Below are positions 436 through 64,000 of a stretch of DNA of 64,000 nt, piece by piece; positions within the stretch are counted from its first letter, which is position 1, and each line of letters begins with the position of its first letter. Source of the DNA: Iphione sp. A-MEVVRFRX5 (Eukaryota). The notes beneath the pieces were generated by a model, which saw only the letters and a list, made by a program, of their open reading frames with translations, did no database searches and had not been told where the DNA came from. The translations under genes and the position numbers were made by a program. The stretch lies in assembly GCA_976226885.1 (NCBI GenBank), contig OZ320317.1, positions 77,996,001 through 78,060,000 of the forward strand, written 5' to 3'.

Positions 436-1998
436 CTCGCCCCTACGGAGGGCACATAGTCCGCAACCACTCGCAGAACCTGGTCGAAGGTGGCCGTCTG
501 TCCATTCTTGTTACCCAGCACCCTGAACGTGTAGTCCCCGGGACTGAGTCCCGCCGTGTTTACCACCCAGCTGCTGCCCGTGTGGGAGAAGAGGCCCGTC
601 ACTTCCTGGTCACAAGCCGAACCAGCCGGGAAGTGACCCTCGGTAGGGTCGCCAGTCACAACTAGGCCAATCTGACAACAATCATAGGCCTTGGTCAACA
701 GAAAGGACACTCAATGCAAATAAGGTTTCAGGCAGGTTTCGATACGCCGACTGTTTTCTGGCGTTCCATAAGTATAGGAATATACATGTCGTTGAAATAC
801 CCAGAAATATTAAACGTACCCCGAAATGCTGGGGGGGGGGGGGAATCGCCCCGATGCTTTGTAGCATATGTGCTTGCTTCCAATATTAACACTCCTGTAC
901 CAGAAGGAGCCAACTCATTTCTATACCACAGAACATCACCTCCTCGGTTTCAATCTCGATTGAAGTGTATTGTGAAAACAATGCATTTGTATTCATATGA
1001 ACGACCAGGTGCTACGAAATCTAAGATAGAATACGGGTCTGTCCATTACATCAGGGCAACAGTGATATGCTTGAAATTATCCTACTAATTAGTGACGTGC
1101 CGGTGAAGGTTTCAGGAACTATACTACATGCTCGTGTAAAGTAGCTCAATATTGTCGTGAGACAATGAGTCAGTCACATACACACACAGCTTACCTTGCA
1201 GGACCAGGAGAAGGTGATGGGCCCCTTGGAGGAGGTCTTGTCACTCAGGTCAAAGGAGAGTTGGCCTGCATCGAGCAGTTCGCCCTCCCGTCGACCCTGC
1301 TGTACCACCCTCAGGTCACCCCCGCTCAGACGCACCTGAAGCTGAGACTTGAGCAGCCCCATGTACAGCCAGTCGGACGTCTCGTTCAGCGTGCCGAGCA
1401 GCTCGATCTTGAGCTTGTACAGCCCTGGCTCCAGCACCTTGGTATCCTGTGGCCAATATGGTTGAATGAGAGGATCATGGCCAGTGCAGATGGGAGGTGA
1501 GAATGGTTGTAGTTAATGGTGTTTAGGTTTGATAGGTAGAACAAGAAGAACATGGGAATATTTGAACAATTAAGGTCATTGGTCATCAAATCTTGATCCA
1601 TCGAATAATCCTCGTGCAGGAGCCGTTCGGTCTGTGAAGTAACTCTTGTACTCAGGTTATGACTGTAATGGCTCGCTAACAGTATCTTTGTTATGAATCT
1701 ACGTTTACAATAACATAAACCAAAATGTTAACCTTTATTTGTAGAAAGTAACTTCGACCGCCATTGTAGTAGTCGGTGGACAATAGGGTGAGAGCAGTTG
1801 TTTCCGGCTCGGCCCCCGACCCGGACCCGGAGCCGTCCGTTGAAGGTTCGGAGACGTTGGCGATGTACCAGCGATAGAGTCGGTTTGAGCTACATGAGCC
1901 ACTCACCAGGGGTAAAACCTCCAGGTTACCCACACCCATAAAGAGCGGCGTAGTGATGTCCTTGTAGGAATCCGGTAGAGAGAGAGATACGCAGTTTT
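436..1998 (-). CDS. REJ module N-terminal part, exons 1733-1998, 1195-1446, 436-671
   Basis: NCVSLSL..SGSC..YRWYI..|[41 protein letters not shown]|..[28 protein letters not shown], resembling the REJ-region motifs of polycystin-1/REJ proteins. Confidence 0.75.
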
Positions 1999-4900
1999 CT
2001 AAGAGGGGAATAACGACAAAATCAAGAAGAATGAGGTGTGTTAAGCCGGTGTAGTATACATCGAACTTTAAAGACTAGAAGCAGTAGTACCCTACAATGA
2101 ATGGATAATACCGCCTCGGTGATAAGTCTAAAGTCTTTAAGGGTATGGTTCCAATTATAGGGACATACATTTGATAACCCTCAACAGATGTTCATCAATC
2201 TAGAAAAGAGTTGCCCTTAGACAAGGACCGGAGGATTTACTATATAAAAGATGTGAAATTATCTGTATGTACCTATCATCACCACCTTTCGGCGATAAAG
2301 CTGTTTGGCTTCAGGTGGACATTCTCTGTCTTCTTTCACCTCTCACTCTTTTCTCTCTGACCTATTCTTTCTGTACGTAAACAATATTTCCAAGAAGCTA
2401 TCGAAATCTGGTATGTCTTTTGAACGATATGTCTGCCCACATTGGTAAGGATCAACCATTGGGCAGGTAAGAAAATGTAATTTCTGTCTCATCATAATGG
2501 GACGCTGTTTGGTCAGAGGACAGAATGCAAAGGGAGCTCTTCAAACCACAAAATAGATCGTATATACCATCTTACTGTATATTCTCAGAACCAATATATT
2601 TCCTAATGTAAATACCATCCACCTCTATTTTAAATACATGTATGCCAAGGACGTTACCTCTTCTTCAATGATCATGAGCAAATCCTGCCTCAATAAACAG
2701 AGAAAGCGTGTACCTTCGAATTACGAAGCTCCTACACATAACGTTTCCCCACAAATTACATCTCTACGAAGCATAAAATTCTATAAACTCTGAACTACAG
2801 TTGTATACAATGACGCCTCTGACTGTGATCACCTCGTTAATATTGCCAAATTAGTCTGGAACCGAATTTATTCCTATCTAGCCTAATATGAAAACCCTTC
2901 AGTAATTCGGCCACGTTTAGGTGATCATGGCCATTTCCGTCATTCTCTCAGGCTGGAAGAGTTCACTCACTTTTCCGGACTAAGGCCTAAAAAAAGAGTT
3001 CTGTGTTTCCGGTAACAAGCCCAAAAAATATAGGGTTGGTAGGTCGGTGGCATATTTTTTTTTATTTCTCTTTTTTTCAATGTAAAAAAATGCTCCCATC
3101 AACAAATCAATCTGGCAATATATGTTCTAATGGTTAGATCTTAATGAAATATATACCAAATGAAAGCTTATATCATAAGGAAGACAATGGTGTATCATAT
3201 GAGTCTATATCTTTATTCTTTGCTGAAATATTCATAAAACAAGTATAAAATAAAAATTTACATTGACACCAAAATTAGGGTCGGTCGGGTTACCGGAAAC
3301 ACAGATATTTTTTGCTTAGGCCTAATCATTTTAGTACCAATCATAATCAGATTAACAAAAGGGATACTCTATCATTTACAGCATTTATAAAAAGTCCTTT
3401 CAAACTTCAGACAGTAAATAAATGCTGTACACGTTTAAATTGGATTTAGAAAATCTGTGAATAAACTGACCTGTACATTTGAGCGCTCCCAGTGTGACCT
3501 TCGCCTGCTGGGTTCCAAGTAGAATACCCTGGATATCCAAGCCCCTCAGGGGCATGCTCTGGGTGTCGGTTATAGAACCGGTGTCTGTTCCAACGCTTCC
3601 TGACGCCAGGCACCTGCACGATCCTAAGAAAAGAAATTAAACTCACGTAGGAATAACGAAACATCGTTATTTCTTCCAATTGGTTAGATTTAAATCACTT
3701 TGGCCTTTCCCACCCCTGATGTATAGCCGTCCATTTTAGTGCAGGCAGGTATAGTACAGAATTTCCCTAATTATCATTATTGATATTCTTCATGTGATAG
3801 AGCCAACAAAAGCCTAAGGTATCCAGTCCTTGCTATGATAGCAAAACTCAGCGAAGTACAAATGTTTGTTCAAAGAGGGTTAAAATTTCCAAGTGTTTCT
3901 TCCATAGGGATGCACGGACTAAGTTTCGCTATTTGACTGTTCCCCAAACACATTTTCTGTTGCTTAAACTCGCACCATACCTGGCAGACAGAGGGAGCTA
4001 CCAGTTGTCCAGTCACTGAGGTTTGTATTCCCGTAGGAAAACCAGGATATGGACGTCAACGACACTCCGTTACATTCAACTTTAACTGACATAAAACATT
4101 GCTGCGACCTCTCCACCAGCGTTCGCACCTGAAAAGAAGGATTGACAAATGATAATGAAGAACTAGTTGGCGTGAAGCTAAACTTCACGATACGGTGAAC
4201 CCAAAATGCGCCACGCTTGTAAACAATGCAAAATAGATTGCAATGGAAACATTCATGAAAAAGATTTTATTAAAACAAATACGCGATATGATTGGACGTC
4301 ATTGACAGATTGTTGTATATTTCATTTTATTAACATGCTGGCAGATAGCACGAGGTCTAAACATCTTCAGTCTGTATGCGGAACCAGGAATTCGGACAAC
4401 CGGGTACTGTTTACCTTAACCGAAGCACACAGTCCACCCCCCGTTATCAGATAATATACACGAGATTGTTATAAACACTATAATATGTACATATTTGTAT
4501 TTCACAAACATTGGCCTACATGGGACACTCTTAGACCCCTACAACTTAGATTAACGGTATAGTAGCACTCCCCGAGGTCAAAGGGCTTAACATAAATTAA
4601 AACATTTTCTTTACATATTCTTTTTTCCCTACGTATCCATATCTAAAAGTATCAGCCTCACCGTTTCTATGGGAATGTTAGAGCCCCCATCCAGGTAGTT
4701 TATGCCGACTGTGAGTGGCGTTCCAGCCGTCACTAGGGTCGTCATTTGGTCGTGGTTCACCTCCGTGTACAGAGCCCCAGCCTCCATCGTACAGGTGGCG
4801 TTGTAAGGCAGGTCGGGGCCATCCAGACCGTCGGGGTCGATCAGATACACAGACGTGGTCGTGTAGCCCAGGTTGTACCACAGGTCGCATGTATCCTGTC

Positions 4901-5666
4901 CAACTGGCAGATGACAACGGTGAATTATACATGAACATATCTAAGGAGAGTGCACTAGATCGGTTAATTTTGTCTCCAATTTGAACACTGTATGCTTATC
5001 TTCCAGAACGCTCGCTCACTTATGGGCTGCACAAAAAAGACGAAAATGTTGTTTGAAGTCTGTCTTCATTATAGAATTATTAGGAGAACATATTTCTTGC
5101 TCATCATGAACTTCTAATACACTATATGCGAGGCCCGTTCGGGGCTGTTCATATGTATCTGTTTCTTTTCCGAAACGAATGGATAATGAGCCGTAGACCT
5201 GTCTAGGACGGATTTTCTATGGATACGGACACGTTTTCCATAGGCCGCAATGGTGCAAAGACATCTGGAAGGAATTAAGTACACACTCCAAGGAAATTAA
5301 AAACGACTACGGACCCATAGAGATGTCTTTGTACTCATGCATGTGAATAGGGCCATACTGGTACTTTGAGTTGGGGTTTCTGTTCTGGGTAACGTATTAA
5401 GGAGTGCCCTACCGTCACAGGTGTGTCCACTCCAGCCGATCGTACAAGTGCACGTGAAGTTGCCCGTTAAGTCGGCGATGCAGGTGCCTCCGTTTTGACA
5501 CGGGTACGAATTACAGGGGTTGACTGTGTAAATATTTTAAGACATATATATTGAATTAAGTCATAATCATAAAAGAGAGCAACAGATGAACGAAGAAAGC
5601 AATATATGAGAAAAAATTGTGGTAGAAAGAAAGGGAGACAGAAGGACAATAGAGGGAGGAAGGGGC

Positions 5667-5726
<60 letters not shown>

Positions 5727-8700
5727 GTTTCACGTGCAGGATATTTACAGCTCTGGACTTAAGATGTGATTGTAATTGAATTTCTGTGGAGAGATAGTCC
5801 GGTAATCATTCCCAAAGCGCCCATAAAATCACAGTATCTATATATTCGACACATATTCATCAATCAATCAATAAATCACTCACTCAAAATCCAGTGGAAG
5901 TATGAATAAACGCTCTATTACCTACGAGCCCTCCTTCCCGTCCCCCTTTAGTACTGTTTGTACTCACATATTTCACACATGATCCCCGTCCACATTCGGG
6001 TACAGTCACAGTGGTGTTGCATGGAGTCCGTGTAGCGGGGTTGGCAGGTTCCCCCGTTCACGCAGGGGTTGGAGACACAAAAATCCACTGGAACAAATTC
6101 AGAAAACCTAGTCAGTCAGGGAACACACGGCTCAGAATGAGAGCACTTCCAAACGGGAAATATGCTTAATACTAATGTATAGGTGAATGGTATACTTGCT
6201 GATAAATACATGCAGTATGATTTTTTTTTATTTTTTAATGACATCAAGTTCTCATAACTACACTTATTGACAAGCGCTATGAGTGTAACTTCAATTAAGG
6301 ATATCCCTTACCATTACAAAGTGTCCCCTGCCATCCAGGCGTGCAGGAACAGTTGAAGAACTGATTGTAAACGTCTTCGTTACATGTTGCACTGTTCTGA
6401 CAGGGCGACGACGTACAAGGCATGTCTGCAAATGAAATATTCGTAATCTGTGTTTAATCTGTCTCTAATAAATGCAACAAAAAGAAACAGTAAATCACTG
6501 CCATATCGACAGATAAGATGGCCAAGAAAGAACTTGCAGTTAACCTATCGATTATTAGTTTGTTTTCGTGAGTCCACATGTTTGGCTTCCATCATCGTAA
6601 TTTCAAACCAAGTGGTTAACATATTTTTCTGTCCAAACGATCACCCTGGAGAGCAAGACACAGTTTGGATAAGAATGATTACAAGATACTTGACCCAGAT
6701 GGGCAACGTTTGGACATGTTAGATTGAGCACTGGAAACAGAGGTAGCATCACAGGATTATAGCCAAGACGTAGGTTTGTATGGGATAAAAGGGGCGTGAT
6801 TTACTTACTGTATTCACAGTGGACACCAGTTCTTCCATGTGGACATGTGCAGGAGTAGGTTTCACTGGGAGACACATGGAGTGACTGACAGGTGCCTCCG
6901 GCCATGCATGGATTACTTTCACAGTAGGTGACTGCAAGATAGCGTGCAAAGCTGAATTGATGCAGTCATGCAAAGTCAACAATGATCAGACATAGACCCT
7001 CATTGAAAGGCCGTATTTAATTTCTCCATACAGATTATGATGTCACACCCAATGCAAAGATATGCCTTTGGCCAGTTTGTAAAATACCCCGTGGTGCTGG
7101 TTGGTACACATATTAGAGGCTAAAGCTACTCGTTCTAATGATTATATCAATCTGTTATAGAGAGAGAATTATCTGATAACATACATTTAAGGCCCCTCGA
7201 CCCCAGAGAAAGGGCTCTTTTCATAACCAAGGACGTATGGTTTAGAAGGTCTACACTTTGTTTACACTACACTTATAGCTGATATTAAATAGCTGCCAGA
7301 AATGGTCCCGATGCATTCTAATGACTGTGCATGCTTCAATGACAGCTAGCCAATCAGGGAGGCATTTATAGAGATCATGTAGGCCTACTGGGGGGATTTT
7401 CCCATTGATGATGTCATAGAAAAGGGAATCCATACCAGTTTGTATCAACTGCCACTGCAAGCATTAAAGACGCTTGTTTACAGAAGAAATTGCCCTTTAA
7501 TTTCTTATGTAAGGTAATACTTATTATAAGGAATAAATCAGACTACATTGCCACTATTATGTTATAAAAGCTTCGATATAGTTGGGTACTGTAAAAGAAC
7601 TTCTACTAAGTAAACCAATCAGCTTAAAGTACGGGGTTGACTGGTAGAATTTTGTCATGAATTAAAGTTCCGTTTTTTTAGATAGTAGTCAAACATCTCG
7701 AAATTGATATAGCTCTAGTAATTAGTGTTACAATGACTGAAAGATCTTAACTTGATACCGATTAGACATGACAAAAGCATGTTGCTAGAGCAGCAAAGAC
7801 TTCCCAAGTTCGCAATGACTCACATTCGCAAACGTTGCCATAATATCCACTGATGCATGTACAATTGAAATAATCCAAGGAAAAGTCCTCGTAGCAGGCT
7901 CCACCATGCTCACAGGGGTAGGACATGCATGGGAGGACTGGAAGATGAACATTGAAAGTGAATGAATTTATCAATTGTGCTCCAACATACACTTTAAATA
8001 CCTGAGGACAGCTTCTCGTAATACCGTTTGATATGCTGGCATACCATTCTGGTCATATATTCAGGAGGGACTCAAATGAAGGCCAGTTAGTTGACCTTTA
8101 GTTCACAGGTTATTTTTCTTTTCTTCAAATAGACCTCCAGATATAACCAAATGTCTAAATTAGCACAATGATTCGCTCTGTTATATGAGGGCATTGATTT
8201 CATGTACAAGGTCGCTAAAACAGCCCTCTTGCAGAGGAACAGCTTTAGATAGTTCCAGCTCTACATACTATATTCGCAGTGTTCTCCTGTCCTGTCTGCA
8301 GTGCACTGACAGTAGTATGTTTCGTTGTACAGTTGGTGGAGCGAAACGCAAGTTCCACCTCCCTGACAGGGATTCGAAACACAGTACGTGTCTGCAAGAA
8401 AAAAAGGTGATAGAATTGTCACAATCTCTATTTTTTCAATCTCCCCTATCTTAATATCCATATAGTTTTAGTTACTATCTTTTATACCGGTAACATTATC
8501 CAAGTGCAAACACCTAACTTATGATCATGGTTGTATGGACTCCGTCAGCTATCAGAAATCAGCAGTAATATTCATTGCGAAAAAGAGCATTGTGTATTTC
8601 GAGTACATTTGTTTGAATAAAACATGCAACATTTTACCTTCACAGTGGGTGTTTATATAACCTGTGGTGCAGTTGCAGGTATACCTAAAACCAAACTCAG

Positions 8701-52081: not shown

Positions 52082-52130
<49 letters not shown>

Positions 52131-55100
52131 CATGCACTATGGAAAAAAATCTATCCACAAGGAAACCGGGTCTCTGTGCTTGTCCAGAAAATGGGTTGTT
52201 TTCTGCACTTAACATACAGTCCAGAAAAAAAAGACATACACAAGGAAACCGGGCCTTAGTCAGTGGTGCACCATTAGCTGTCAGCAATCAAGGAACTGAA
52301 CCAGGTTTGGGCCATTATCTGGTGTCAATGGTCAGGTTGCAGATCTGAGACCAATTAGAGGACAATATCGTTATATTTGTATCGAATACAATTTAACTGA
52401 CTTACATAATCTAATTTGATAAGTAAATATACAGTTCTAATAAAGAAAAGTCAATAGCCGTTTGTTTAACCCATTAAGAGCTGGACCCCTGCCACTACAG
52501 GGTGAGGACACCTAGCTGAACAACCTTCGATAGGAGGAGGGGCATTTATATAATGATGCCATTCAAAGCATGCTAAATATAAGGTGTGCAAATAAAAATG
52601 ATTTCTTGGAGTTCATAAAGAAAACTGAACTTATTTTAATTGCTTTACATGTGTTCTTTATGGGAAATGCCACAAAATTTAGGAAACAATATAACAACAT
52701 ACTTTGTTTGCCCTTTACATGGGAATGCCTTCATGCATCATCAGGATTTTACCTGGGAATGTCTTCAGGCATTATCTGCCCTGTTAGGATTGATCAGTTA
52801 TCAGGATTGCATTATGATACCGATACTGAGGTTGACAATAATTTCTCTTTCTCTTCCTTCACACTATACTGAAGGCCAATAACAATTTATATCTTAATGT
52901 ATGGTTCTCCCAACGACCCTGGACAACTCGCTGTGGAGATTATTGCCTTTTCACTGTGATTGCCAAGTGCCAAGATTATTTGAAGACAGATAAGGTAGGT
53001 ACCTTTCATAATGAGAGGCCGCATCATGAGACGAGCGGTGTAGGCGGCCGTGGTGGCCGCCACCTCTGTGTCTATGCCTAATGCCCCCGTTGTGGTGTAC
53101 GTGGCTATCTGTTTCAGGTCGGAGGACCCATAACCGGTGCCGGAGATTGACTTCCGCGAGTCCATCATGGCCACCAACCCGTAGGCGGTGACATCAAGAG
53201 ACGGTTGCTGCGTCACTGCAGGGGCAACTATGTTGTCTGCAGCTTCGGTTGTGACGTCTAGAGCAGATTGTGTGGTGTCGGCTGGGTGGGCTGGATGGGG
53301 GAAGGTGATGAGGCTAGGGTTCCAGATGGCATCCACGTAGTGTATACCGAAGAAGTCGCCCGTGTCTACTACTAGGTGGCGCCGCGGAGGCAGATTCGAG
53401 GCGAAGAAGCCATAGCCTGGGAGGAAGCGCAGGGTGGTGACGTGCACGTAGTCAGTGAGGAGGAAAGTCGAGCCCGATGTGTTCCATATTCCTAGTATAA
53501 ACTGGCCACCCTACAGAGAGGAGCACTACGCAATATAATCGGAAATGGGGACTGGAAATTTTTTTCAGCCTAGCTACCTAGATATACATGTACTGCAAAA
53601 CTGGTACTTGTTGAAAGTAGAACATATAAGAATAAATTCATTATGAAGGTTTAAGGAACAGCTCGGTCTTTACTCCCGGGCAAGTGGTTCATCGCGTAAA
53701 AGGGCTGATATATTGAAAAGTGCCTGAACGGGAAGACCTGCGTATCTTTCATTCAATGAGAAGTATACGGGTCTATATGGGTAAAATTTCCAAGTTGTTT
53801 TGATATTTTGCAGTACAAACATATTCAAAGTCAAGCACCTTTCTAGGTACGTCTACTGGATATAGCAAATTGAAATTGTATAAAGAAATACGCCGGAGAG
53901 GAAGTAATAACAGGAGTAATCTTTCCATAGAATTTCGACTATTTTCGACTATTTGAAGGCTAAAGCAGAATCGTCTTACACACCATAGTCATGAAATAAC
54001 TATTGCTGATTTCTTGACGTCTGGACAAAGATGGCCCACTGAATTCGACAATATGGATTTTAGCCCTAATCCATGTTTGTTGGTTATGGTTCATTGAATT
54101 GTCTTCAACGTTAAGGATAGAGTTAGTTTTAAAACAATTTATCCCTTAAAATGTTTTAAATCTACATGCTTCTTACTTCTCAACCACAGGGATATTCATA
54201 ACGGCACTTCAATTGTGGTGTTTGTATTAAAATACATGTATGCATTGCTTGTATACCGAGAATCGTTTTTCTCGGTTATGGTTTCTGTTCTTTACTGAAC
54301 AATTTCACACAGCCATACAAACTATGCTCAGTCCACCTTTACTAGTGATAGCAGGATAAAACACTCTCAAGAAGAGGATCAGTAAAAGGTCACCCGACTT
54401 ACGTTATATGCCAAGTAATCGAGTCCGGCCAGGTATCCCTGACAGGAGGTGGGTATGCTTTCCTCAATTATCAGTTCCCTTCCAGGTACTTCCTCGTTTG
54501 GTGTTACATCCAGAGAGGTGGAAAGGATGCCGCAGTCATCTGCAGAGATTCGGTCAACAAGTTAAACATATATTTGCTGGCAGACACTAAGAAAATCCAG
54601 CAATAGGCAAAACCGTTATAACATGAGAGACTCTCAGGTATTCAGGGGTCATGCTTTACATGTATTTGATGGTCATGCTCATGGATGTAGCGGCGGAACT
54701 GAGTGAATAAGCCAACATAGATTGATAACTGACTTGTTCACGTGTGTGCAGTCTTCCCGCTTAAATGTCTGCGTTTGTGCAAAGTGAATCAGTTTGGTGT
54801 AGATTTTTACAGAAATGGATTCATGAACATAAAAACTTCAACATCTGCTCCAGTTTGGATATCTGGAAGTCGTTCAGTCGTGCATCCTTGTGTGGGTTGC
54901 ACATAAAATGAAGCGATTTCCATAAAAGATAACATATTCATGTAAAGCCAGCATACACCTATCATTATAGTGGGAAGACCAACAGTTGAACAGTTGACAT
55001 TACGCTAACAGTTGTTTATGAGTGGATCAGTTATTACCTAATTGCTAGAATATGTTTACAAATGGTAGAATCTCTTACAAGAATCGTTTAGAGCTGGCTG

Positions 55101-58100
55101 ACATGTAGAGGTTCATAAAGGTTTCTGATATTTCTTGTTACTTTGTGTATGGTGCTCAAATTATATGCAGCGCACAATGTTCACCCATGCCCTTACTATA
55201 ATATGCAAAATCCGTTCATTCGTACGTTATATATTACAAATCTGTGTAATGTGTGAGTAAAACAAATTCACCTAAATGGGTTTGATTTACGATTCTTATA
55301 TTTAGTTCATCATATATGGATCAGGACTTTATATGTCTTCATATCTAATTTATAAATGCTTGCCATGAAAATGTACCATCAATACATCTTGTCTAGAAAA
55401 TGACCTTTTATCATACAGTCATGAAACATCGTATGACGCATAAAATATAATAGATATTTTACTGATACCACATGTACACAGAAAGGATATATTGTCTGCA
55501 GAATATTATTCAAAATATTATGTCAATTCAGGTGAAAATACATGTACCCTGCCTACATCCTAACGGACCTTCGTAATCACAATGAATTCACGATAAGGCC
55601 AGAGCAAAAACTGTGTCCTCTTTGTAGAATAAACCAATCTTCTGTACATTAAACACAAATCATGTGGAGAGAACTATCATAGATAAAGAATTGAGCCTAG
55701 TCGCGAGAGTGCACCGCTGTGAGTGTGTAGTCCACCTACCAAACACCATGTCCACGTAGAGCTGGCGGGCCTCGTAGTCTGTCAGCCGGCGGTCCCAAAA
55801 GACCAGGTCGGCCACGCTGCCCAGACCATACTTGCTGTCCTCATCTGTTGGCTTTCCTATGAGCAATGCGGCCTGGTTGACAGACATGCTGTAGGCCGTG
55901 CCGTTCTTATCTAGATCCACCAGAATGCCATCGATGTACAGGCTGACACCACGTGACTGTGAATAGGTTGTGAGGACGTGGTACCAGCGTGACTGGCTCA
56001 AGGGATGGGAGAGGGGGCCATATTGGCGGTTGCCGTCCCGGACCTGCAGAGTAAGGAGAAGTGTTCGTGAAAAGTGCATATCTGCTGTGTATGCAAGATG
56101 CAGTGCAAATGAAAGCCACCTTACAGACTGATGTCTCATGCACATAAGAAGACGTATCAATAGACTTTGGCTAGTTGATGGGCATAATAGGGAAAATGTT
56201 TTAGGGATGTGTGAGGACCATAAAAATTGCACTGGGAGAATTCAGAGAGACTATGGAAGATAGAAAGTGACAGTGAGGAAATACATAGTAAATATGGGGA
56301 ATGGATAGTAACAGTACCTCAAGGAATAGAAAGAATCAACTTTCCCTTTTTCTGTCTTGGTCTTTGCATCTGTCTCTATCGTTCTTTTTCATCAGATGAT
56401 GGACAATGGGAAAGAGAAAAGGTTTTGTTCTGAGGGATATTACCCATAATAAGCATTTGAACGTCTAACTAGTCTAACTGTAACCTGAGACTCGCGCTGC
56501 ACATAGTAACATCTCACCACATCTTATATTTTCTTGCTCATAATATGAAATGAATAGTGCATAGTAGATCAAAGAGGGCACACCACATACATTTCCTAAG
56601 ATGGTAGCAATTCAGCAAGACATCCTACCTCCAGTGTAAGACGAGGGTTCGAGAAGGAGACCGCTATTCCCTTGCCGACTGATGACTGCCCTCCTGAGGA
56701 CAGGAAGAAGCTGGTGGCTAGCACCTCCTGCGGTACCAACTTCAGCCAAATTCCATAGGTAGCGCCACTATTGCAGACCGCAAAATCATTAAAGCATCCA
56801 CTACCCACCCCGGCAACTTCCAGCCACTGGGATTGCCCGTCAAGTGATACGAAGTCAAAGCCATCATCTGCTTTCACTTCTGGTGAGCCGTTCAGTGTTG
56901 CAGTACCGCTGTTCCCTTGAAGGACATTGCTCTGTCCCCTCATGGGTATATGCACAGTCACGGCTGAAATGAAAGGATTCTTTATCACCATTCATCCATC
57001 TACGACCCTTGATGCATTCAGATTATTTTCTTTCAAAGATAAGAGTACCTATTTGATGAAAGATATTTAACTGCATAAGAAAAGGGAAGGTCAAAAATAT
57101 TGACGAATTGCTTAATGTAGATGATTTCCTTGCGAATCTTACATGAAGCGTCTCGGAGGTATTTGGTATTACAGGAAATGGAAACACAATGCTTACCTGT
57201 TTGGCAAAGTTTACCCAGATAACCCGCGCCACACGTACAAATGTGACCATCAGGTCTTTCTGCGCATGTCCCACCATTTAGACAGGGGGAACTATCACAG
57301 GGATTGCATACCGCCAGTGGTAGAACCTCAGAAAAGGGATTAAGATAAGGTAATTCATTCAAGCTAAAAGGATTTAATTGTTGTACCAATGTGCTATATT
57401 GGTAATTCATATATATAATATATAATTTTGTCAACATAATATAATACAGTTTGAATGGTGATTAGAATAATAAATCTGAAAGGTGCTATCACATGAATGT
57501 ATAACAAGGTTTTTTCAATGTGATACAGAGCAATTGCATTGTTAAGAGCATTTCAACTGGTTCGCAGCCAAAGGACGGATCTCTGGCGTATACTCACAGA
57601 TAATAAAGCAAACCTTGTGTACACTTGTAGAAGAAGATCTCAAAAGGAACTTTGGATCAAGATCACTAGATGTTTAGCTCCCCCCCCCCTTTCCAATAAA
57701 CTCACACAAATCATTCGGTGGCTGATGCATATGAAATCTCTACTTCAGTTGAAATTCCCTCTGGTACCATACGCCATTCCCTTTGACAAGGGCAACACAT
57801 ACATTGTTTTGTTTAAATTCAATTTAGAATTTGGTGTTACTTCTCCTTTAATTTGTCTAATGGAACTGGATTGAAGAGGAGCTGAAAACATATTGGCCCC
57901 TGGTGCAAGCTGATATATGCAAAAAGATTATCATCCAAACCTTTGGAGGTTGATATACATTGCTACCGTATCTCAGGTTGGTGTTTCCTCTGGGAGACAA
58001 TACGAAGGGTTCGGATATAAATAACCCTATTCAATAAATTCAACTACCATCAGTCACTGTCTTACTAAAATTGCTAACTTCGAGCCAGAAGTCTCATCCT

Positions 58101-59046
58101 CATTAGAATAGGCCTGTTCATTTGATAAATAACGAATAATGTACTTGTTATAGTACAACTATATATGAATATTTGATTTTTAATTCAAAATGATATAAAC
58201 ACTCTTCCAAAAAGATGTTGTTTAATGCTCAGTGCATTCTTTGACACTCTATTGTGTAAAATATATAGATGCTGTTAATTATGTAAATTAATGTTAAATT
58301 CTAATTATTTTACAGAATCAGTTCTAGAAAAGATATCTTTGAAAGGGTTTCTATATATTTCTATCGTTATATAAATATTTTTTCCTCAAAATTTTTTTCC
58401 TTAAATTTTATTACTATAGTATTCTAATGTTTGTATCAATGTAAATTAGTTAATTTACACATCCAAAGACATGACTTAAAGTTACTTTATTAGAATACAA
58501 ATTTTAGCAGAACTAATTTTTACAACAGATTCTTCACTAGATGTTCATTTCCTTCGTTTTTAGGTTGCTAATATGGGTATTTGACATTCTTACTGAACTA
58601 CATTGGATACCCCTGTTCCCATGGCTGCCCACAGGTGTATGTTATGCTACAGTTTTTGCAATGATATCAGTCAGGAATGACATGAGCAGTTTATATTGCA
58701 GGTCGTCTTGCATCCATCCTGTATATATGTTTAGCATGTCAAAGAAATCAGTCAGGTTATTGACGTGAATACATGTATTTGTTGTTATAAACACACGTGT
58801 CTAGACTGTGCTCATTAGACCTGCGTTAACAGCATATAGACAGTTTATCCTTGTGGAGATATTTTGGGAAAGGCTCCCATTCACTATGGTAAATTGATGC
58901 AATGTGCAACATAACTTATGTTTCATTAAACAATACAAATAGAAGTAACTATGTATGAGTACGGTACTTGGCTACGTCAACGAAAAGACCTTAAAGTCTC
59001 CTACCATAGCAAAGAGAAAGACGACGTGATGTGGGCATATTTCCAT
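436..59046 (-). CDS. Large multi-exon gene (3' end outside window): polycystin-1/REJ-family-like receptor with EGF x16, LamG, unnamed domain X x4, FTP x2, PAN x3 and fibrinogen-like ectodomain
   Basis: 42 exons with AG/GT boundaries and compatible phases, no in-frame stop, 7856 nt: 59005-59046, 57197-57326, 56629-56963, 55740-56043, 54403-54539, 53003-53510, 50580-50690, 50060-50340, 49547-49754, 48918-49031, 48085-48315, 47234-47467, 46641-46751, 45598-45742, 45204-45304, 44140-44634, 42977-43096, 32602-32715, 31997-32188, 19643-19867, 18971-19084, 17766-18017, 17203-17472, 14209-14271, 13721-13867, 12853-13157, 12387-12603, 11483-11599, 9173-9289, 8638-8751, 8269-8391, 7824-7937, 6809-6931, 6312-6425, 5968-6087, 5413-5523, 4662-4903, 3981-4128, 3471-3623, 1733-1998, 1195-1446, 436-671. 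The family call rests on the REJ-like last three exons; GAIN/GPS, PLAT and TM segments are not in the window. Confidence 0.85.
2984..3322. mobile_element. MITE, PIF/Harbinger (Tourist)-type
   Basis: TAA target duplication at 2981-2983 and 3323-3325; imperfect TIR GGCCTAA..AAAA..TCTGTGTTTCCGGTAAC at both ends. Confidence 0.8.
3471..4903 (-). CDS. Fibrinogen/COLFI-like domain of Caspr/neurexin-IV type, exons 4662-4903, 3981-4128, 3471-3623
   Basis: [30 protein letters not shown]..|[22 protein letters not shown]|..[24 protein letters not shown]. Confidence 0.8.
5413..11599 (-). CDS. Nine tandem EGF exons (EGF8-16)
   Basis: 11483-11599, 9173-9289, 8638-8751, 8269-8391, 7824-7937, 6809-6931, 6312-6425, 5968-6087, 5413-5523; each 111-123 nt, phase 1-1, C-x4-PC-x5-C..C-x-C..G..C spacing. 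Confidence 0.92.
5667..5722. repeat. (GA)n microsatellite
   Basis: Direct reading. Confidence 0.95.
11168..11360. mobile_element. Degenerate MITE related to 2984-3322
   Basis: TTA on both flanks; shares accctacctaccgaccct (inverse of the internal agggtcggt motif) and a gaaacacagata..G(G/A)CC end; left TIR eroded. Confidence 0.55.
12387..13157 (-). CDS. Unnamed domain X copy 4, exons 12853-13157 and 12387-12603
   Basis: ..[32 protein letters not shown]|[18 protein letters not shown]. Confidence 0.85.
13721..14271 (-). CDS. Thr-rich linker exons 14209-14271 (63 nt) and 13721-13867 (147 nt)
   Basis: [21 protein letters not shown] and [49 protein letters not shown]; strong splice sites, phase 1-1. 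Confidence 0.75.
14670..14711 (-). CDS. Candidate 42-nt linker exon ([14 protein letters not shown])
   Basis: tctttatcattctttaaaatag| ... ACCACACGAGCAG|gtagaa; phase 1-1, open, Thr-rich, contains an NAT sequon. Confidence 0.5.
15099..15122 (-). CDS. Candidate 24-nt microexon A (GVAKMTTA)
   Basis: ccttttag|GTGTGGCAAAGATGACAACAGCAG|gtaaag. Confidence 0.65.
15343..15366 (-). CDS. Candidate 24-nt microexon B ([G/S]LAEMTTA)
   Basis: actttcag|GTTTGGCAGAGATGACAACAGCAG|gtaaac. Confidence 0.65.
15952..15975 (-). CDS. Candidate 24-nt microexon C (DLAEMTGA)
   Basis: cctttcag|ATTTGGCAGAGATGACAGGAGCAA|gtaaag; weaker donor. Confidence 0.55.
16197..16220 (-). CDS. Candidate 24-nt microexon D (DSAETTTT)
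   Basis: acctccaag|ATTCAGCTGAGACAACAACAACAG|gtaaag; AAG acceptor is weaker. Confidence 0.55.
16438..16461 (-). CDS. Candidate 24-nt microexon E (DSAEMTAA)
   Basis: cctttcag|ATTCGGCAGAGATGACAGCAGCAG|gtaaag. Confidence 0.7.
16683..16706 (-). CDS. Candidate 24-nt microexon F (DSAETTTA)
   Basis: acctcccag|ATTCAGCTGAGACAACAACAGCAG|gtaagc. Confidence 0.7.
17075..17160. repeat. AT-rich (TAA/ATT)-type simple repeat
   Basis: Direct reading. Confidence 0.8.
17203..18017 (-). CDS. PAN/apple-like domains 2 and 3, exons 17766-18017 and 17203-17472
   Basis: ..[36 protein letters not shown] and [47 protein letters not shown]; both phase 1-1 and alignable by eye to PAN1. Confidence 0.75.
18971..19084 (-). 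CDS. EGF7 exon
   Basis: [38 protein letters not shown]; 114 nt, phase 1-1. Confidence 0.9.
19643..19867 (-). CDS. FTP domain 2, second half (after a 12.1-kb TE-rich intron)
   Basis: [44 protein letters not shown]; 225 nt, phase 1-1. Confidence 0.85.
21151..25422 (-). mobile_element. Full-length, decayed RTE-clade LINE
   Basis: APE endonuclease ([30 protein letters not shown]), RT ([18 protein letters not shown]), C-terminal C..C..GL.SH.RC, 3' tail CCATTGTCTCTTGAGACAGACAGATGCC(AAC)n. 12-bp TSD aagacaaccaat (21139-21150) / aagacaactaat (25423-25434). Many stops and frameshifts. Confidence 0.9.
23595..24245. mobile_element. TA-flanked MITE (Tc1/mariner-like ends) nested in the RTE, carrying ~90-bp and 31-bp tandem repeats
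   Basis: Imperfect TIR (C/T)AG(T/A)GGA..TCAAA(A)TCCAAACAC, TA on both sides; removing it restores RTE codons C-S-Y-H-D-L; 31-bp units such as gaatttggctgtatttcaccaatttttggac at ~23993-24170. Confidence 0.8.
26184..28889 (+). mobile_element. piggyBac-family DNA transposon, pseudogenised (PGBD4-like transposase)
   Basis: Catalytic DDD motifs VSVDET (~27392), YMDNFFSS (~27628), GGVDRPDQ (~27973); KPNKWGIK; frameshifted C-terminal [31 protein letters not shown]|CCCTATCC ... GGATAGGG|TTAA ends. Ends uncertain: alternative left end at 25991 (TTAA|CCCC). Confidence 0.85.
30000..31200 (-). mobile_element. Highly decayed CR1/L2-like LINE RT fragment
   Basis: [13 protein letters not shown] (RT D..KAFD.V.H-like), [39 protein letters not shown]; boundaries approximate. 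Confidence 0.7.
31997..32188 (-). CDS. FTP domain 2, first half
   Basis: [52 protein letters not shown]; 192 nt, phase 1-1. Confidence 0.85.
32602..32715 (-). CDS. EGF6 exon (not in ORF track)
   Basis: [38 protein letters not shown]; 114 nt, phase 1-1. Confidence 0.9.
33695..34484. mobile_element. Possible solo LTR
   Basis: ~790-bp segment bounded by TGTAAC...GTTACA; no TSD found and no second copy in the window. Confidence 0.3.
35250..35458 (-). repeat. Gypsy 3' LTR
   Basis: TGTAGTGG...TGTAACA termini, polypurine tract GGGCAGGGGAGAG immediately upstream (35459-35471), TATATAAA (~35385) and AATAAA (35357-35362); ~105 bp shared with 42024-42127. Confidence 0.8.
42024..42127 (-). repeat. Gypsy 5' LTR, U5-side half
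   Basis: About 11 mismatches over ~103 bp against 35250-35353 (hand count); adjoins the PBS. Confidence 0.8.
42977..43096 (-). CDS. EGF5 exon (not in ORF track)
   Basis: [40 protein letters not shown]; 120 nt, phase 1-1. Confidence 0.9.
44140..44634 (-). CDS. Unnamed domain X copy 3 (single 495-nt exon)
   Basis: ..[48 protein letters not shown]; phase 1-1. Confidence 0.85.
45204..45742 (-). CDS. PAN/apple-like domain 1, exons 45598-45742 and 45204-45304 (not in ORF track)
   Basis: [49 protein letters not shown]|[33 protein letters not shown]; phases 1-2 then 2-1 match. Fold assignment is from Cys spacing only. Confidence 0.7.
46641..46751 (-). CDS. EGF4 exon (not in ORF track)
   Basis: [37 protein letters not shown]; ttctcag| and |gtgagt; 111 nt. 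Confidence 0.9.
47234..48315 (-). CDS. F5/8 type C / fucolectin-like (FTP) domain 1, exons 48085-48315 and 47234-47467
   Basis: [29 protein letters not shown]..|..[23 protein letters not shown], the typical FTP start and end motifs. Confidence 0.85.
48918..49031 (-). CDS. EGF3 exon
   Basis: [38 protein letters not shown]; 114 nt, phase 1-1. Confidence 0.9.
   Translation of the reverse strand: MPVIALLAMPPVLVLVSRISVPTSVFVLRGLSDASVR
49330..49460. repeat. Degenerate (C/T)AGTAGT-type simple repeat
   Basis: Direct reading. Confidence 0.7.
49547..50340 (-). CDS. Unnamed domain X copy 2, exons 50060-50340 and 49547-49754
   Basis: ..[25 protein letters not shown]|[16 protein letters not shown]; acceptor at 50341-50342 is weak but has a CTAAC branch point 25 nt upstream. 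Confidence 0.8.
50580..50690 (-). CDS. EGF2 exon
   Basis: [37 protein letters not shown]; 111 nt, phase 1-1. Confidence 0.9.
51625..52254. mobile_element. Composite Harbinger-type MITE with internal (GA)n at 52084-52128
   Basis: TTA on both flanks; TIR G(A/G)CCCGGTTTCCTTGTG; second internal TIR pair at ~51833 and ~52172; internal hairpin gtctccagaccacggac / gtccgtggtctggagac. Confidence 0.75.
53003..54539 (-). CDS. Unnamed domain X copy 1, exons 54403-54539 and 53003-53510
   Basis: ..[14 protein letters not shown]|[27 protein letters not shown]; the 54403-54539 exon is absent from the ORF track in the coding frame but has ctgcag| and |gtaagt sites. Confidence 0.8.
55740..56963 (-). CDS. Laminin G-like (ConA-like) domain, exons 56629-56963 and 55740-56043
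   Basis: ..[26 protein letters not shown]..|..[34 protein letters not shown]; phases 1-0 then 0-1. Confidence 0.85.
57197..57326 (-). CDS. Exon: signal peptide end + EGF1
   Basis: [43 protein letters not shown]; 6-Cys EGF spacing; donor G|gtaagc. Confidence 0.9.
59005..59046 (-). CDS. First coding exon (signal peptide start)
   Basis: aaccATGG start, [14 protein letters not shown], donor ATG|gtagga in phase 0. It joins the phase-0 acceptor at 57326 to give [25 protein letters not shown], a hydrophobic signal peptide directly before EGF1. An acceptor-like tacttcttcag lies 10 nt upstream of the ATG, so a non-coding exon may precede it. Confidence 0.7.
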
Positions 59047-63690: not shown

Positions 63691-64000
63691 TCAGGTCACG
63701 TAACTCAGAATGAAACACAGAGCTTAATTACTGGAATAGTTTCATTCTTTCATAACTTTAATCTTAGGTATAGTCGTTTTAGAGACACGTCTGTTAGTAA
63801 AGGCCTGCCTGTATATCACAAAGAAGATACATAGCATGACATCTACAGGGGATATACAGTCTGTGAAACGATCGCAAAATACCACCAGTTAAGGGGACTG
63901 CTTTTCCGTGCAGTGGTTGAACATCCAGGCTCCGAGGTGTGGTTTGCAATCATGGGCAGGAACTACCCTGTTTGTATGCTTACATTGGGGTATTGTACTG

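What the first reader, a model, noticed from the sequence alone, without database searches (positions are those of the whole stretch)
436..59046. Polycystin-1/REJ-like receptor with an unusual mosaic ectodomain of about 2,600 aa or more
Seen: signal peptide, 16 EGF, LamG, 4 X, 2 FTP, 3 PAN-like and a Caspr-type fibrinogen-like domain precede REJ-like sequence; nearly all domain boundaries are phase-1 introns. Established: polycystin-1/REJ proteins (PKD1, sea urchin REJ, LOV-1) have variable N-termini followed by REJ, GAIN/GPS, PLAT and TM segments, and act in fertilisation and ciliary sensing; phase 1-1 modules are the signature of exon shuffling. Inference: I do not recognise this domain combination from a characterised family member, so it may be a lineage-specific adhesion or carbohydrate-sensing polycystin. 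Novelty is unverified.
Basis: partly seen in the sequence, partly recalled or inferred. Interest (0 to 1): 0.7.

Follow-up and report, generated by a model that had tools for sequence, protein, structure and literature searches.

The report
Giant mosaic polycystin-1-like receptor gene
The window holds most of the outer part of one very large polycystin-1/REJ-family membrane receptor gene, probably from an annelid worm, whose extracellular region is an unusual chain of shuffled adhesion and lectin-type modules. It is a new variant of a known receptor family, not a new kind of system.

Summary
On the minus strand, 40 AG/GT exons with matching phases and no stop give 2,550 codons (59046 to 436).

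Module order: start exon, EGF, LamG, X, EGF, X, EGF, discoidin/FTP, EGF, X, EGF, a degenerate EGF, 2 EGF, discoidin/FTP, EGF, 2 Cys-rich modules, X, 9 EGF, an unassigned module, REJ.

- There are 17 EGF plus one degenerate, not 16.
- One "PAN-like" exon is the second half of the second discoidin/FTP domain.
- "Fibrinogen-like" is not statistically supported.

The gene continues left of the window. There I found the rest of REJ, a GPS-like motif, TM1, a PLAT-like domain, further TM segments, Polycystin_dom and PKD_channel. The span is about 80.5 kb and roughly 6,000 aa.

The nearest paralogue (28% identical in the channel exon) has the same order: EGF, FTP, EGF, PAN, X, 11 EGF, REJ. Its last EGF exon lies 368 bp from its REJ exon. 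This argues for one fused gene rather than two neighbours.

No close orthologue exists in 1.84 billion representatives. None of the 150 best relatives carries an EGF array. The ten sea-urchin REJ proteins lack this layout. No RNA run was listed, so splicing and expression remain untested.

Verdict: new variant of a known kind.

The parts
59005..59046 (-). Start exon: ATG at 59046, 14 codons, short hydrophobic run (putative signal peptide start), donor phase 0
   Evidence: not verified by a signal-peptide predictor or by RNA
57197..57326 (-). EGF1 exon (phase 0 in, phase 1 out)
   Evidence: Pfam EGF 1.1e-6
56629..56963 (-). LamG exon a (1 in, 0 out)
   Evidence: Pfam found nothing on this exon alone, it is assigned as the N-terminal half of the domain hit in exon b
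55740..56043 (-). LamG exon b (0 in, 1 out)
   Evidence: Pfam Laminin_G_3 1.7e-10, profile positions 57-149 of 151
54403..54539 (-). X1 exon a (1 in, 0 out)
53003..53510 (-). X1 exon b plus a Thr/Ala-rich linker (0 in, 1 out)
   Evidence: z 6.7 against X3
50580..50690 (-). EGF2 (1-1)
50060..50340 (-). X2 exon a (1 in, 0 out); a CTAAC branch-point-like motif lies upstream of the acceptor
   Evidence: z 10.1 against X4a
49547..49754 (-). X2 exon b (0 in, 1 out)
48918..49031 (-). EGF3 (1-1)
48085..48315 (-). Discoidin/FTP-like domain 1, first half (1-1)
   Evidence: F5_F8_type_C_2 at E 0.018; z 9.3 against FTP2a
47234..47467 (-). Discoidin/FTP-like domain 1, second half (1-1)
46641..46751 (-). 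EGF4 (1-1)
44140..44634 (-). X3, a complete X module in one exon (1-1)
   Evidence: no Pfam hit; profile A2 scores 1.5e-33; AF2 pLDDT 54, all-beta core
42977..43096 (-). EGF5 (1-1)
42146..42271 (-). Degenerate EGF-like exon with 4 of 6 cysteines (1-1); inclusion in the mRNA is uncertain
33141..33257 (-). EGF6 (1-1)
32602..32715 (-). EGF7 (1-1)
31997..32224 (-). Discoidin/FTP-like domain 2, first half (1-1)
   Evidence: F5_F8_type_C_2 3.6e-8 and F5_F8_type_C 2.9e-6
19643..19867 (-). Discoidin/FTP-like domain 2, second half (1-1), reached across a 12-kb intron full of transposon remains
   Evidence: z 4.1 against FTP1 second half
18971..19084 (-). EGF8 (1-1)
17766..17972 (-). Cys-rich module A ('PAN-like', unverified; acceptor choice uncertain) (1-1)
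   Evidence: no Pfam hit
17203..17472 (-). Cys-rich module B, PAN/Apple-like (1-1)
   Evidence: Atlas: PAN_1 clusters at 0.91-0.92, and all ten best named hits are PAN; homologous exon in the C4 paralogue at E 1.5e-5; no Pfam hit
12853..13157 (-). X4 exon a (1 in, 0 out)
   Evidence: profile A2 2.3e-31
12387..12603 (-). X4 exon b (0 in, 1 out)
11483..11599 (-). EGF9 (1-1)
9173..9289 (-). EGF10 (1-1)
8638..8751 (-). EGF11 (1-1)
8269..8391 (-). EGF12 (1-1)
7824..7937 (-). EGF13 (1-1)
6809..6931 (-). EGF14 (1-1)
6312..6425 (-). EGF15 (1-1)
5968..6087 (-). EGF16 (1-1)
5413..5523 (-). EGF17 (1-1)
   Evidence: Pfam EGF 1.1e-8
4662..4903 (-). Unassigned module, exon a (1 in, 0 out); its N-terminal motif resembles the start of fibrinogen-like and collagen C-propeptide domains
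   Evidence: only E 1.5 to the MFAP4 fibrinogen-like domain; no Pfam hit
3981..4128 (-). Unassigned module, exon b (0 in, 1 out)
3471..3623 (-). Unassigned module, exon c (1-1)
1733..1998 (-). REJ exon 1 (1 in, 0 out); no in-frame ATG upstream of the acceptor
   Evidence: homologous exon and acceptor position in the C4 paralogue
1195..1446 (-). REJ exon 2 (0-0)
   Evidence: Pfam REJ 1.9e-6, profile positions 46-131; tblastn to a crinoid PKDREJ-like protein at 6e-4
436..689 (-). REJ exon 3 (0 in, 2 out); the gene continues left of the window
   Evidence: Pfam REJ 0.0074, positions 152-206; the next exon has a phase-2 acceptor at L002 9909

Best explanation
One intact gene of about 80.5 kb lies on the minus strand at G000:C11:77,974,540-78,055,046. 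It encodes a polycystin-1/REJ-family (PKD1-like) multi-pass membrane receptor of roughly 6,000 residues.

The window holds its first 2,550 codons, an extracellular chain built by exon shuffling. The order is: start, EGF, LamG, X, EGF, X, EGF, discoidin/FTP, EGF, X, EGF, degenerate EGF, 2 EGF, discoidin/FTP, EGF, 2 Cys-rich (PAN-like) modules, X, 9 EGF, an unassigned module, then the start of REJ. X is a roughly 165-residue all-beta module without a Pfam family.

Left of the window come the rest of REJ, a GAIN-like region with a GPS-like motif, TM1, a PLAT-like domain, more TM segments, the polycystin (TOP) domain, a PKD-channel-type block and a repeat-rich tail. One TM-flanking loop holds about 1,400 residues of acidic repeats.

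Inferred mechanism, from what is established for PKD1, suREJ3, LOV-1 and Platynereis PKD1-1: the protein sits in a sensory cilium or sperm membrane and pairs with a PKD2-type channel subunit. Its long ectodomain binds matrix, cell-surface or glycan ligands, or bears mechanical load. That state is passed through REJ/GAIN and the TOP domain to the channel complex.

Shown here: the exon chain, the domains, the family membership and the conserved fusion. Inferred: expression, topology, partner, ligand and tissue. The confidence given is for the single-gene PKD1-like reading; the mechanism itself I put at about 0.5.
For: - Exon chain: 40 exons, all AG/GT, phases compatible, no stops, 2,550 codons. 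The chain continues across the window edge with matching phases.
- Domain hits: EGF, Laminin_G_3, F5_F8_type_C and REJ. REJ positions 207-259 and 272-413 (7.2e-20), Polycystin_dom 7.1e-21 and PKD_channel 2.5e-10 lie downstream.
- Collinear tblastn of PKD1-like proteins to the REJ, GAIN/GPS, PLAT, TM and channel exons. The matched parts of P0058 and P0049 are their Pfam PLAT and GPS regions.
- Open frames of 1,499 and 858 codons, with repeat periods that are multiples of three.
- One gene rather than two: the first REJ exon has a phase-1 acceptor and no in-frame ATG upstream.
- The nearest paralogue (C4:60.838-60.891 Mb, 28% identity in the channel exon) has the order 3 EGF, FTP, EGF, PAN, X, 11 EGF, REJ. 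Its REJ-exon acceptor is at the homologous position and phase, 368 bp after the last EGF exon.
- Background on function: PMC1934368 and PMC6294549.
Against: - No transcript evidence. No RNA run was listed. Every splice site rests on consensus, frame and homology.
- Pfam does not detect GPS or PLAT on the single exons. In my alignment the GPS cleavage tripeptide reads H-E-S rather than H-L-T/S, so autoproteolysis is doubtful.
- The signal peptide is weak.
- No orthologue was found anywhere. The best match is 30% identical, so conservation or purifying selection of this exact gene could not be measured.
- Ligand, partner and tissue are pure inference.
Confidence: 0.8

Rival explanations
1. Two adjacent genes on the same strand. 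The upstream gene would encode a secreted EGF/LamG/discoidin matrix protein ending near 3400. The downstream gene would be a separate PKD1-like gene whose coding region begins with the REJ exons.
For: If the donor at 3471 is not used, the frame of the 3623-3471 exon runs on into a stop at about 3403. Phase-1 modules join to anything, so phase compatibility alone is weak evidence. No RNA data are available. In corals, EGF/LamG proteins and REJ proteins are separate gene products (PMC4890752).
Against: The first REJ exon has no in-frame ATG or signal-like sequence upstream, and it has a good phase-1 acceptor at 1998. The gap is only 1.47 kb. The C4 paralogue has its last EGF exon 368 bp before a REJ exon whose acceptor is at the homologous position and phase. 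Its module order matches the proximal half of this ectodomain. A relative in another organism also carries kringle and EGF exons directly before REJ.
Confidence: 0.07
2. A decaying or silent copy: an unexpressed relic of a once-functional PKD1-like gene, or a gene whose real mRNA uses only a subset of these exons.
For: No RNA run was listed. Large introns are full of retroelement remains. One EGF-like exon is degenerate. The channel region is very divergent, at most 30% identical to anything known. The GPS motif is non-canonical.
Against: Forty window exons plus the downstream exons keep frame, splice signals and cysteine patterns without a single stop. Open frames of 1,499 and 858 codons survive, with repeat units in multiples of three. 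That is not expected of a neutral relic.
Confidence: 0.08
3. The gene is real, but it is not a channel-associated sensor. It would act mainly as a giant adhesion or matrix-anchoring protein, with the shed ectodomain as the functional product, as proposed for the coral skeletal REJ protein. The PKD-channel-like block would be only a membrane anchor.
For: The ectodomain is made of adhesion and matrix modules. The coral REJ protein is found in the skeletal organic matrix (PMC4890752). The huge disordered acidic loop and the repeat tail are not typical of channel subunits.
Against: The GPS cleavage motif looks non-canonical, which argues against shedding at that site. Polycystin_dom and PKD_channel are retained with significant scores. 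The genome keeps many PKD2-type and PKD1-type loci.
Confidence: 0.15

Closest known systems
Polycystin-1 family, 11-TM members (human PKD1, PKD1L1-3, PKDREJ; sea urchin suREJ3; C. elegans LOV-1; Platynereis PKD1-1)
   Same: REJ domain, a GAIN/GPS-like region, TM1, PLAT, a TM bundle, the polycystin (TOP) domain and a PKD-channel-type block, in that order. The N-terminus is long and variable.
   Different: The ectodomain has none of the usual modules (LRR, WSC, C-type lectin, SUEL, PKD repeats); none was hit on the scanned exons. Instead it carries 17 EGF, LamG, 2 discoidin/FTP, PAN-like modules and 4 X modules. The channel exon is at most 30% identical to any known protein. The GPS tripeptide reads H-E-S. 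There is a loop of about 1,400 residues of acidic repeats and a repeat tail.
Sea urchin REJ proteins SpREJ1-10 (PMC1934368)
   Same: PKD1-family members with lectin-type or EGF modules ahead of REJ. SpREJ1 has one EGF.
   Different: According to the paper, EGF is found only in SpREJ1, as a single domain. The text does not mention LamG, discoidin or FTP. The SpREJ proteins use C-type lectin, SUEL, PKD repeats and WSC.
Paralogue in the same genome, C4:60.838-60.891 Mb (+)
   Same: Same module order next to the membrane: FTP, EGF, PAN, X, an EGF array, REJ. The intron before the first REJ exon has the same position and phase.
   Different: It has 15 EGF in all and lacks the distal LamG, X, X, FTP, X part and the unassigned module before REJ. 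It is only 28% identical in the channel exon.
Caspr/neurexin-IV-type and fibropellin/Crumbs-type mosaic ectodomains
   Same: They use the same toolbox: discoidin, LamG, EGF and possibly a fibrinogen-like unit, joined as phase-1 shuffled exons. This comparison rests on my own knowledge of those families.
   Different: Those are single-pass or secreted proteins without REJ, GAIN or a channel block. No sequence-level relationship beyond the shared modules was tested or found.
Relative in another organism (ENA ERZ25767047, contig ctg38661; P0004)
   Same: REJ, GAIN/GPS, PLAT and the channel exons are clearly homologous. An EGF exon lies just before REJ.
   Different: Its ectodomain, as far as I walked it, is at least 4 kringle domains plus one EGF, in a much more compact gene. 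So the shuffled part differs between lineages.

Membership tests
Polycystin-1 / REJ (PKD1-like) family | REJ domain (PF02010) | tested here: met
   Collinear exon hits. Window 1446-1195: positions 46-131, E 1.9e-6, 27.2 bits against a cut-off of 25. Window 689-436: positions 152-206, E 0.0074. L002: positions 207-259 and 272-413, E 7.2e-20. The whole-genome scan gives 74.1 bits just left of the window.
Polycystin-1 / REJ (PKD1-like) family | GAIN domain with a GPS motif just before the first TM segment | tested here: inconclusive
   No PF01825 hit on the single exons. tblastn aligns P0058 residues 36-159 to L002 2326-2694 at 2e-4; that stretch runs into P0058's Pfam GPS at 148-186. A C-x2-W-x6-W motif is present, and a TM segment follows in the next exon. 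In my pairwise alignment the cleavage tripeptide reads H-E-S instead of H-L-T/S. The motif is split by an intron, and I did not scan the joined sequence.
Polycystin-1 / REJ (PKD1-like) family | PLAT/LH2 domain after TM1 | tested here: met
   Pfam PLAT itself gives no hit on the two exons or in the genome scan at this locus. However, 21 PKD1-like proteins align to L002 1088-1276, best at 1e-6 and 42% identity. P0058 also aligns at residues 305-348 to L002 843-959. These stretches lie in their Pfam PLAT domains: P0058 258-363, P0049 1147-1261. The feature is met by homology to relatives, not by the profile.
Polycystin-1 / REJ (PKD1-like) family | Polycystin (TOP) domain and PKD-channel-type TM block at the C-terminal end | tested here: met
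   PF20519 at 7.1e-21 and PF08016 at 2.5e-10 on the last exon. 1,499 library proteins match at E up to 0.001; the named ones checked are polycystin-like.
Polycystin-1 / REJ (PKD1-like) family | 11-TM topology and pairing with a PKD2-type subunit | not testable with these tools
   Hydrophobic segments are visible in the expected places.
EGF-like domain (PF00008) | Six-cysteine pattern and a profile hit | tested here: met
   17 pattern hits on the minus strand against one junk locus on the plus strand. Pfam scores 1.1e-6 and 1.1e-8 on EGF1 and EGF17.
Laminin G / ConA-like (PF13385) | Profile hit above the curated cut-off | tested here: met
   41.7 bits against a cut-off of 27.6, E 1.7e-10, on exon 56043-55740.
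F5/8 type C (discoidin) / FTP | Profile hit, and for a true F-type lectin the His/Arg fucose-binding residues | tested here: inconclusive
   FTP2 first half: PF22633 scores 34.4 bits against a cut-off of 27.8, and PF00754 scores 27.9 against 28.2. FTP1 first half scores only E 0.018. The second halves are recognised only by mutual similarity. By eye, and from memory of the motif, the fucose-binding His is not in place in either copy. I therefore call them discoidin-fold modules, not proven fucolectins.
PAN/Apple (PF00024) | Profile hit | tested here: not met
   No Pfam hit at E up to 0.5 on either Cys-rich exon. The protein-language look-alike search puts module B next to PAN_1 clusters (0.91-0.92, ten of ten named hits), which is a lead only. 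Module A has no support.
Fibrinogen C-terminal domain (Caspr-type) | Profile or sequence match to a fibrinogen-related domain | tested here: not met
   No Pfam hit. The best solved-structure match is the MFAP4 fibrinogen-like domain at E 1.5, over 36 residues of exon a only. Exons b and c match nothing relevant. By eye, a collagen C-propeptide-like reading is equally possible.

The most novel reading that the evidence does not exclude
X would be a previously undescribed extracellular beta-sandwich module that recurs specifically in the ectodomains of polycystin-1-like receptors of this lineage. There are four copies here and one in the C4 paralogue. A tandem array of at least five lies upstream of another REJ gene at C11:58.92-58.94 Mb.

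On this reading, the gene belongs to an old subfamily of 'adhesion-type polycystins'. Their exon-shuffled ectodomains would serve as diversified ligand-recognition surfaces, for gamete, larval-settlement or chemo/mechanosensory cues, coupled to a TRPP channel.
Probability: 0.3. Interest if true: 0.65.

Novelty: new variant of a known kind. Interest (0 to 1): 0.5.

Why it matters
Polycystin-1-family receptors are central to kidney disease, left-right patterning, sperm-egg signalling and ciliary mechanosensation. What their huge ectodomains bind is still largely unknown.

This gene shows a member in which the usual LRR, WSC, lectin and PKD-repeat ectodomain is replaced by a different, well-delimited set of adhesion and lectin-type modules. 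The set includes a module with no family assignment.

The membrane-proximal layout is shared by a very divergent paralogue, so the fusion is old and presumably functional. If expressed, the protein would offer separable single-exon modules (X3, PAN-like B, the discoidin domains) for ligand screens. It would also be a natural test of how different ectodomains drive the same REJ/GAIN/TOP/channel machinery.

It does not change the concept of the family.

Tried and rejected
- RNA evidence. The look-up of sequencing runs listed no run, so read laying was never used.
- Orthologue search with the channel exon. The best hit was 30% identical. The 155 retrieved proteins gave no tblastn hit to the window.
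- Word-based search with X3: nothing.
- X3 as a single sequence against its own genome: only itself.
- Reverse-transcriptase ORF search to place the organism: only 30-42% identities and no informative names.
- Earlier-findings look-ups by several words: empty.
- AF2 of X3 alone gave pLDDT 41. With a 9-row alignment it gave pLDDT 54 and pTM 0.57.
- Pfam on the PLAT, GPS, PAN-like, X and fibrinogen-like exons: no hits.
- My idea that the pre-REJ module is a fibrillar-collagen C-propeptide domain got no tool support.
- An echinoderm or amphioxus origin was rejected. All mitochondrial genes lie on one strand, in an order I recognise as the annelid pattern.
- Joined model. I did not hand the joined spliced protein to any search or fold tool. 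Everything was done exon by exon, by reference, so domains split by introns are under-detected.
Full report
**Place and strand.** The window is G000:C11:77,996,001-78,060,000 of a 1.18-Gb assembly in 89 contigs. All coding signal for this finding is on the minus strand. Large introns hold retroelement remains.

**Checking the observation.**
- A six-cysteine EGF pattern gives 17 genuine hits on the minus strand, plus one low-complexity false hit. The plus strand gives a single junk locus.
- Pfam on stop-free exon translations gives EGF (1.1e-6 and 1.1e-8), Laminin_G_3 (1.7e-10), F5_F8_type_C_2 (3.6e-8), F5_F8_type_C (2.9e-6) and REJ (1.9e-6 and 0.0074, at collinear profile positions 46-131 and 152-206).
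- Using simple acceptor and donor scores with frame constraints, I assembled a chain of 40 exons from the ATG at 59046 to the donor at 436. Every exon is flanked by AG and GT. Every junction is phase-compatible. No codon, split codons included, is a stop. The total is 2,550 codons.
- All boundaries between modules are phase-1 introns. The introns inside LamG, X1, X2, X4, the pre-REJ module and REJ are phase 0, with one of phase 2.

- There are 17 EGF exons, plus an 18th degenerate one at 42271-42146 that keeps four cysteines.
- The exon at 19867-19643 is the second half of the second discoidin/FTP domain. It aligns with the second half of the first one at z 4.1, and the two first halves align at z 9.3. 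A 12-kb intron separates it from its first half. Only two Cys-rich 'PAN-like' exons are left.
- Neither Cys-rich exon is hit by Pfam. Module B sits next to PAN_1 clusters in the language-model look-alike search. It also has a homologous exon in a paralogue.
- The 'Caspr-type fibrinogen-like' unit (three exons, 4903-3471) has no Pfam hit. Its only match is E 1.5 to the fibrinogen-like domain of MFAP4, over its first 36 residues. I list it as unassigned.
- The start exon encodes only 14 residues with a short hydrophobic run. A signal peptide is plausible but unproven.

**The X module.**
- The four X copies are related to each other, with shuffle z-scores of 3 to 10.
- X has no Pfam family and no word-search relatives in its length class.
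- The look-alike search places it among unnamed eukaryotic clusters (Porifera, Annelida) at 0.96. PHR, lectin-like and DUF4082 clusters are the nearest named ones, below 0.9.
- A four-row profile finds more copies in the same genome. These are one in the C4 paralogue, five tandem copies at C11:58.924-58.938 Mb, and single hits at C1:7.314 Mb, C11:77.313 Mb and C22:52.24 Mb.
- The C11:58.9 Mb array lies upstream, on the same strand, of REJ hits at C11:58.903-58.906 Mb and a channel exon at 58.831 Mb. X therefore recurs next to PKD1-like genes.
- AF2 with a nine-row alignment gives an all-beta core at pLDDT 54 and pTM 0.57.

**Downstream of the window (L002-L004, L008).**
- The chain continues with a phase-2 acceptor that matches the phase-2 donor at 436.
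- REJ positions 207-259 and 272-413 follow, the latter at 7.2e-20 (74.1 bits in the genome scan).
- Further exons align collinearly with PKD1-like proteins from the large library: a GAIN/GPS region, a PLAT-like domain in two exons, TM regions and the last exon.
- The last exon carries Polycystin_dom (7.1e-21) and PKD_channel (2.5e-10).
- The aligned parts of P0058 and P0049 are their Pfam GPS and PLAT domains.
- Pfam itself does not reach threshold for GPS or PLAT on the single exons.
- In my pairwise alignment, the position of the H-L-T/S cleavage tripeptide reads H-E-S.
- One exon is an open frame of 1,499 codons. It starts with a TM segment and continues as acidic tandem repeats with periods of 96, 63, 117 and 129 nt.
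- The last exon frame is 858 codons and ends in about eight repeats of roughly 45 residues.
- The gene spans about 80.5 kb. By rough addition the protein has about 6,000 residues.

**One gene or two?** No RNA run was listed for this sequence, so there is no transcript evidence. Three observations favour one gene.
- The first REJ exon has a good phase-1 acceptor at 1998. Its frame has no ATG between the preceding stop and that acceptor, and nothing signal-like lies in the 1.47 kb upstream.
- The nearest paralogue in the genome is only 28% identical in the channel exon. It carries the order 3 EGF, discoidin/FTP, EGF, PAN-like, X, 11 EGF, REJ on one strand. No EGF lies further upstream in 58 kb. 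This order matches the membrane-proximal half of the present ectodomain.
- In that paralogue the last EGF exon (phase 1) lies 368 bp before a REJ exon. Its phase-1 acceptor is at the homologous position. Two loci this divergent sharing the arrangement make chance adjacency very unlikely.

A relative from another organism (ENA ERZ25767047; 30% identity) has kringle exons and one EGF directly before REJ. In this clade the part ahead of REJ is evidently a shuffled, lineage-specific cassette.

**Organism.**
- Contig C89 is a 15,544-bp mitochondrial genome with all protein genes on one strand.
- The gene order is cox1, cox2, cox3, trnQ, nad6, cob, atp6, nad5, nad4L, nad4, rRNAs, nad1, nad3, nad2.
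- One-strand coding and a conserved order are described for annelids (PMC4505326). That this specific order is the annelid ground pattern is my recollection.
- An annelid (or close ally) is therefore the likely source. It is not an echinoderm or amphioxus.
- Neither this gene nor a reverse-transcriptase ORF in the window has a close relative in the protein collections. The species and its near kin appear to be unsampled there.

**Comparison with what is known.**
- The gene meets the profile-tested defining features of the polycystin-1/REJ family: REJ, TOP domain and channel block. PLAT is met by homology. GPS is inconclusive.
- Its ectodomain differs from every characterised member I could check.
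  - The ten SpREJ proteins use C-type lectin, SUEL, PKD repeats and WSC, with one EGF in SpREJ1 (PMC1934368).
  - None of the 150 best channel-domain relatives has more than two EGF-pattern hits, and none matches the window.
  - A full-text search for REJ domain with EGF, laminin G and PLAT returned only the coral paper, where these are separate proteins.
[quoted passage not shown] That is the nearest functional precedent.

**Mechanism.** By analogy, the protein is a sensory-cilium or sperm-membrane receptor that pairs with a PKD2-type subunit. Its modular ectodomain would bind matrix or glycan ligands, or carry tension. The REJ/GAIN and TOP domains would pass this on to the channel complex. 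All of this is inference. The domain anatomy is what is shown.

**Limits.**
- All searches and folds were done exon by exon, by reference. The joined spliced protein was not submitted to any tool, so domains split by introns are under-detected. These include the N-terminal half of LamG, the second halves of the discoidin domains, the pre-REJ module, GPS and PLAT.
- Splice sites are predictions.
- The acceptor of Cys-rich module A, the inclusion of the degenerate EGF exon, and possible small exons in the 17203-13157 intron remain open.

**Verdict.** This is a real, apparently intact, very large PKD1-like gene with a new ectodomain architecture, shared in its core by a distant paralogue. It is a new variant of a known kind, of moderate interest.

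Noticed in passing
window 62568-63695 (-): A 376-codon open frame encoding a reverse transcriptase lies upstream of the gene. Library hits all carry PF00078, and the best is 35-42% identical. It is a LINE-like element with no close relative in the collections.
   Followed up: partly
window ~37700-41250 (-) and ~21500-24700 (-): Retroelement remains sit inside two large introns. One is a gypsy-like element with RT (YLDD motif) and integrase-like frames. The other is a LINE-like element with endonuclease and RT-like frames. Both were seen only in translations.
   Followed up: no
window 15797-16774: A 486-bp unit is repeated twice (90% match) in the intron between Cys-rich module B and X4. It overlaps the stretch another note reads as an array of 24-nt microexons. 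I saw no coding signal there and could not test splicing.
   Followed up: partly
L003:4618-9114 (-) = C11:77,980,618-77,985,114: A single open frame of 1,499 codons within the same gene. It begins with a TM segment and continues as an acidic, disordered-looking region with three families of in-frame tandem repeats (32, 21 and 39 residues). Such an insert is unusual in a polycystin TM bundle.
   Followed up: partly
L008:2540-5116 (-) = C11:77,974,540-77,977,116: The last exon frame (858 codons) ends in about eight tandem repeats of roughly 45 Ser/Thr/Asp-rich residues after the channel block. No coiled coil was looked for.
   Followed up: no
G000:C4:60,838,500-60,891,500 (+) (L015-L017): The nearest paralogue, with the order 3 EGF, discoidin/FTP, EGF, PAN-like, X, 11 EGF, REJ and then the channel exon. 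Several of its EGF exons are near-identical tandem duplicates.
   Followed up: partly
G000:C11:58,924,387-58,938,336 (-) (L040-L044): At least five near-identical tandem X-module exons, each an open frame of about 207 codons. They lie upstream, on the same strand, of another REJ gene (REJ at 58.903-58.906 Mb, channel exon at 58.831 Mb).
   Followed up: partly
G000:C89 (15,544 bp; L010, L013, L014): A mitochondrial genome with all genes on one strand, in the order I recognise as the annelid pattern. TGA is used as a sense codon (12 in cox1).
   Followed up: partly
G000:C4:89,642,397-89,642,808 (+): Three short COX1-like fragments lie in a nuclear chromosome. They are probably a nuclear copy of mitochondrial DNA.
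   Followed up: no
L024-L027 (ENA ERZ25767047, ctg38661, 1,352,327-1,398,459): A compact PKD1-like gene of an unidentified organism. Its ectodomain, as far as I walked it, has at least four kringle domains and one EGF before REJ.
   Followed up: partly
window 5570-5800: A (GA)n/(TC)n microsatellite in the intron between EGF16 and EGF17. It reads as long Ser-Leu or Arg-Glu frames and is not coding.
   Followed up: no
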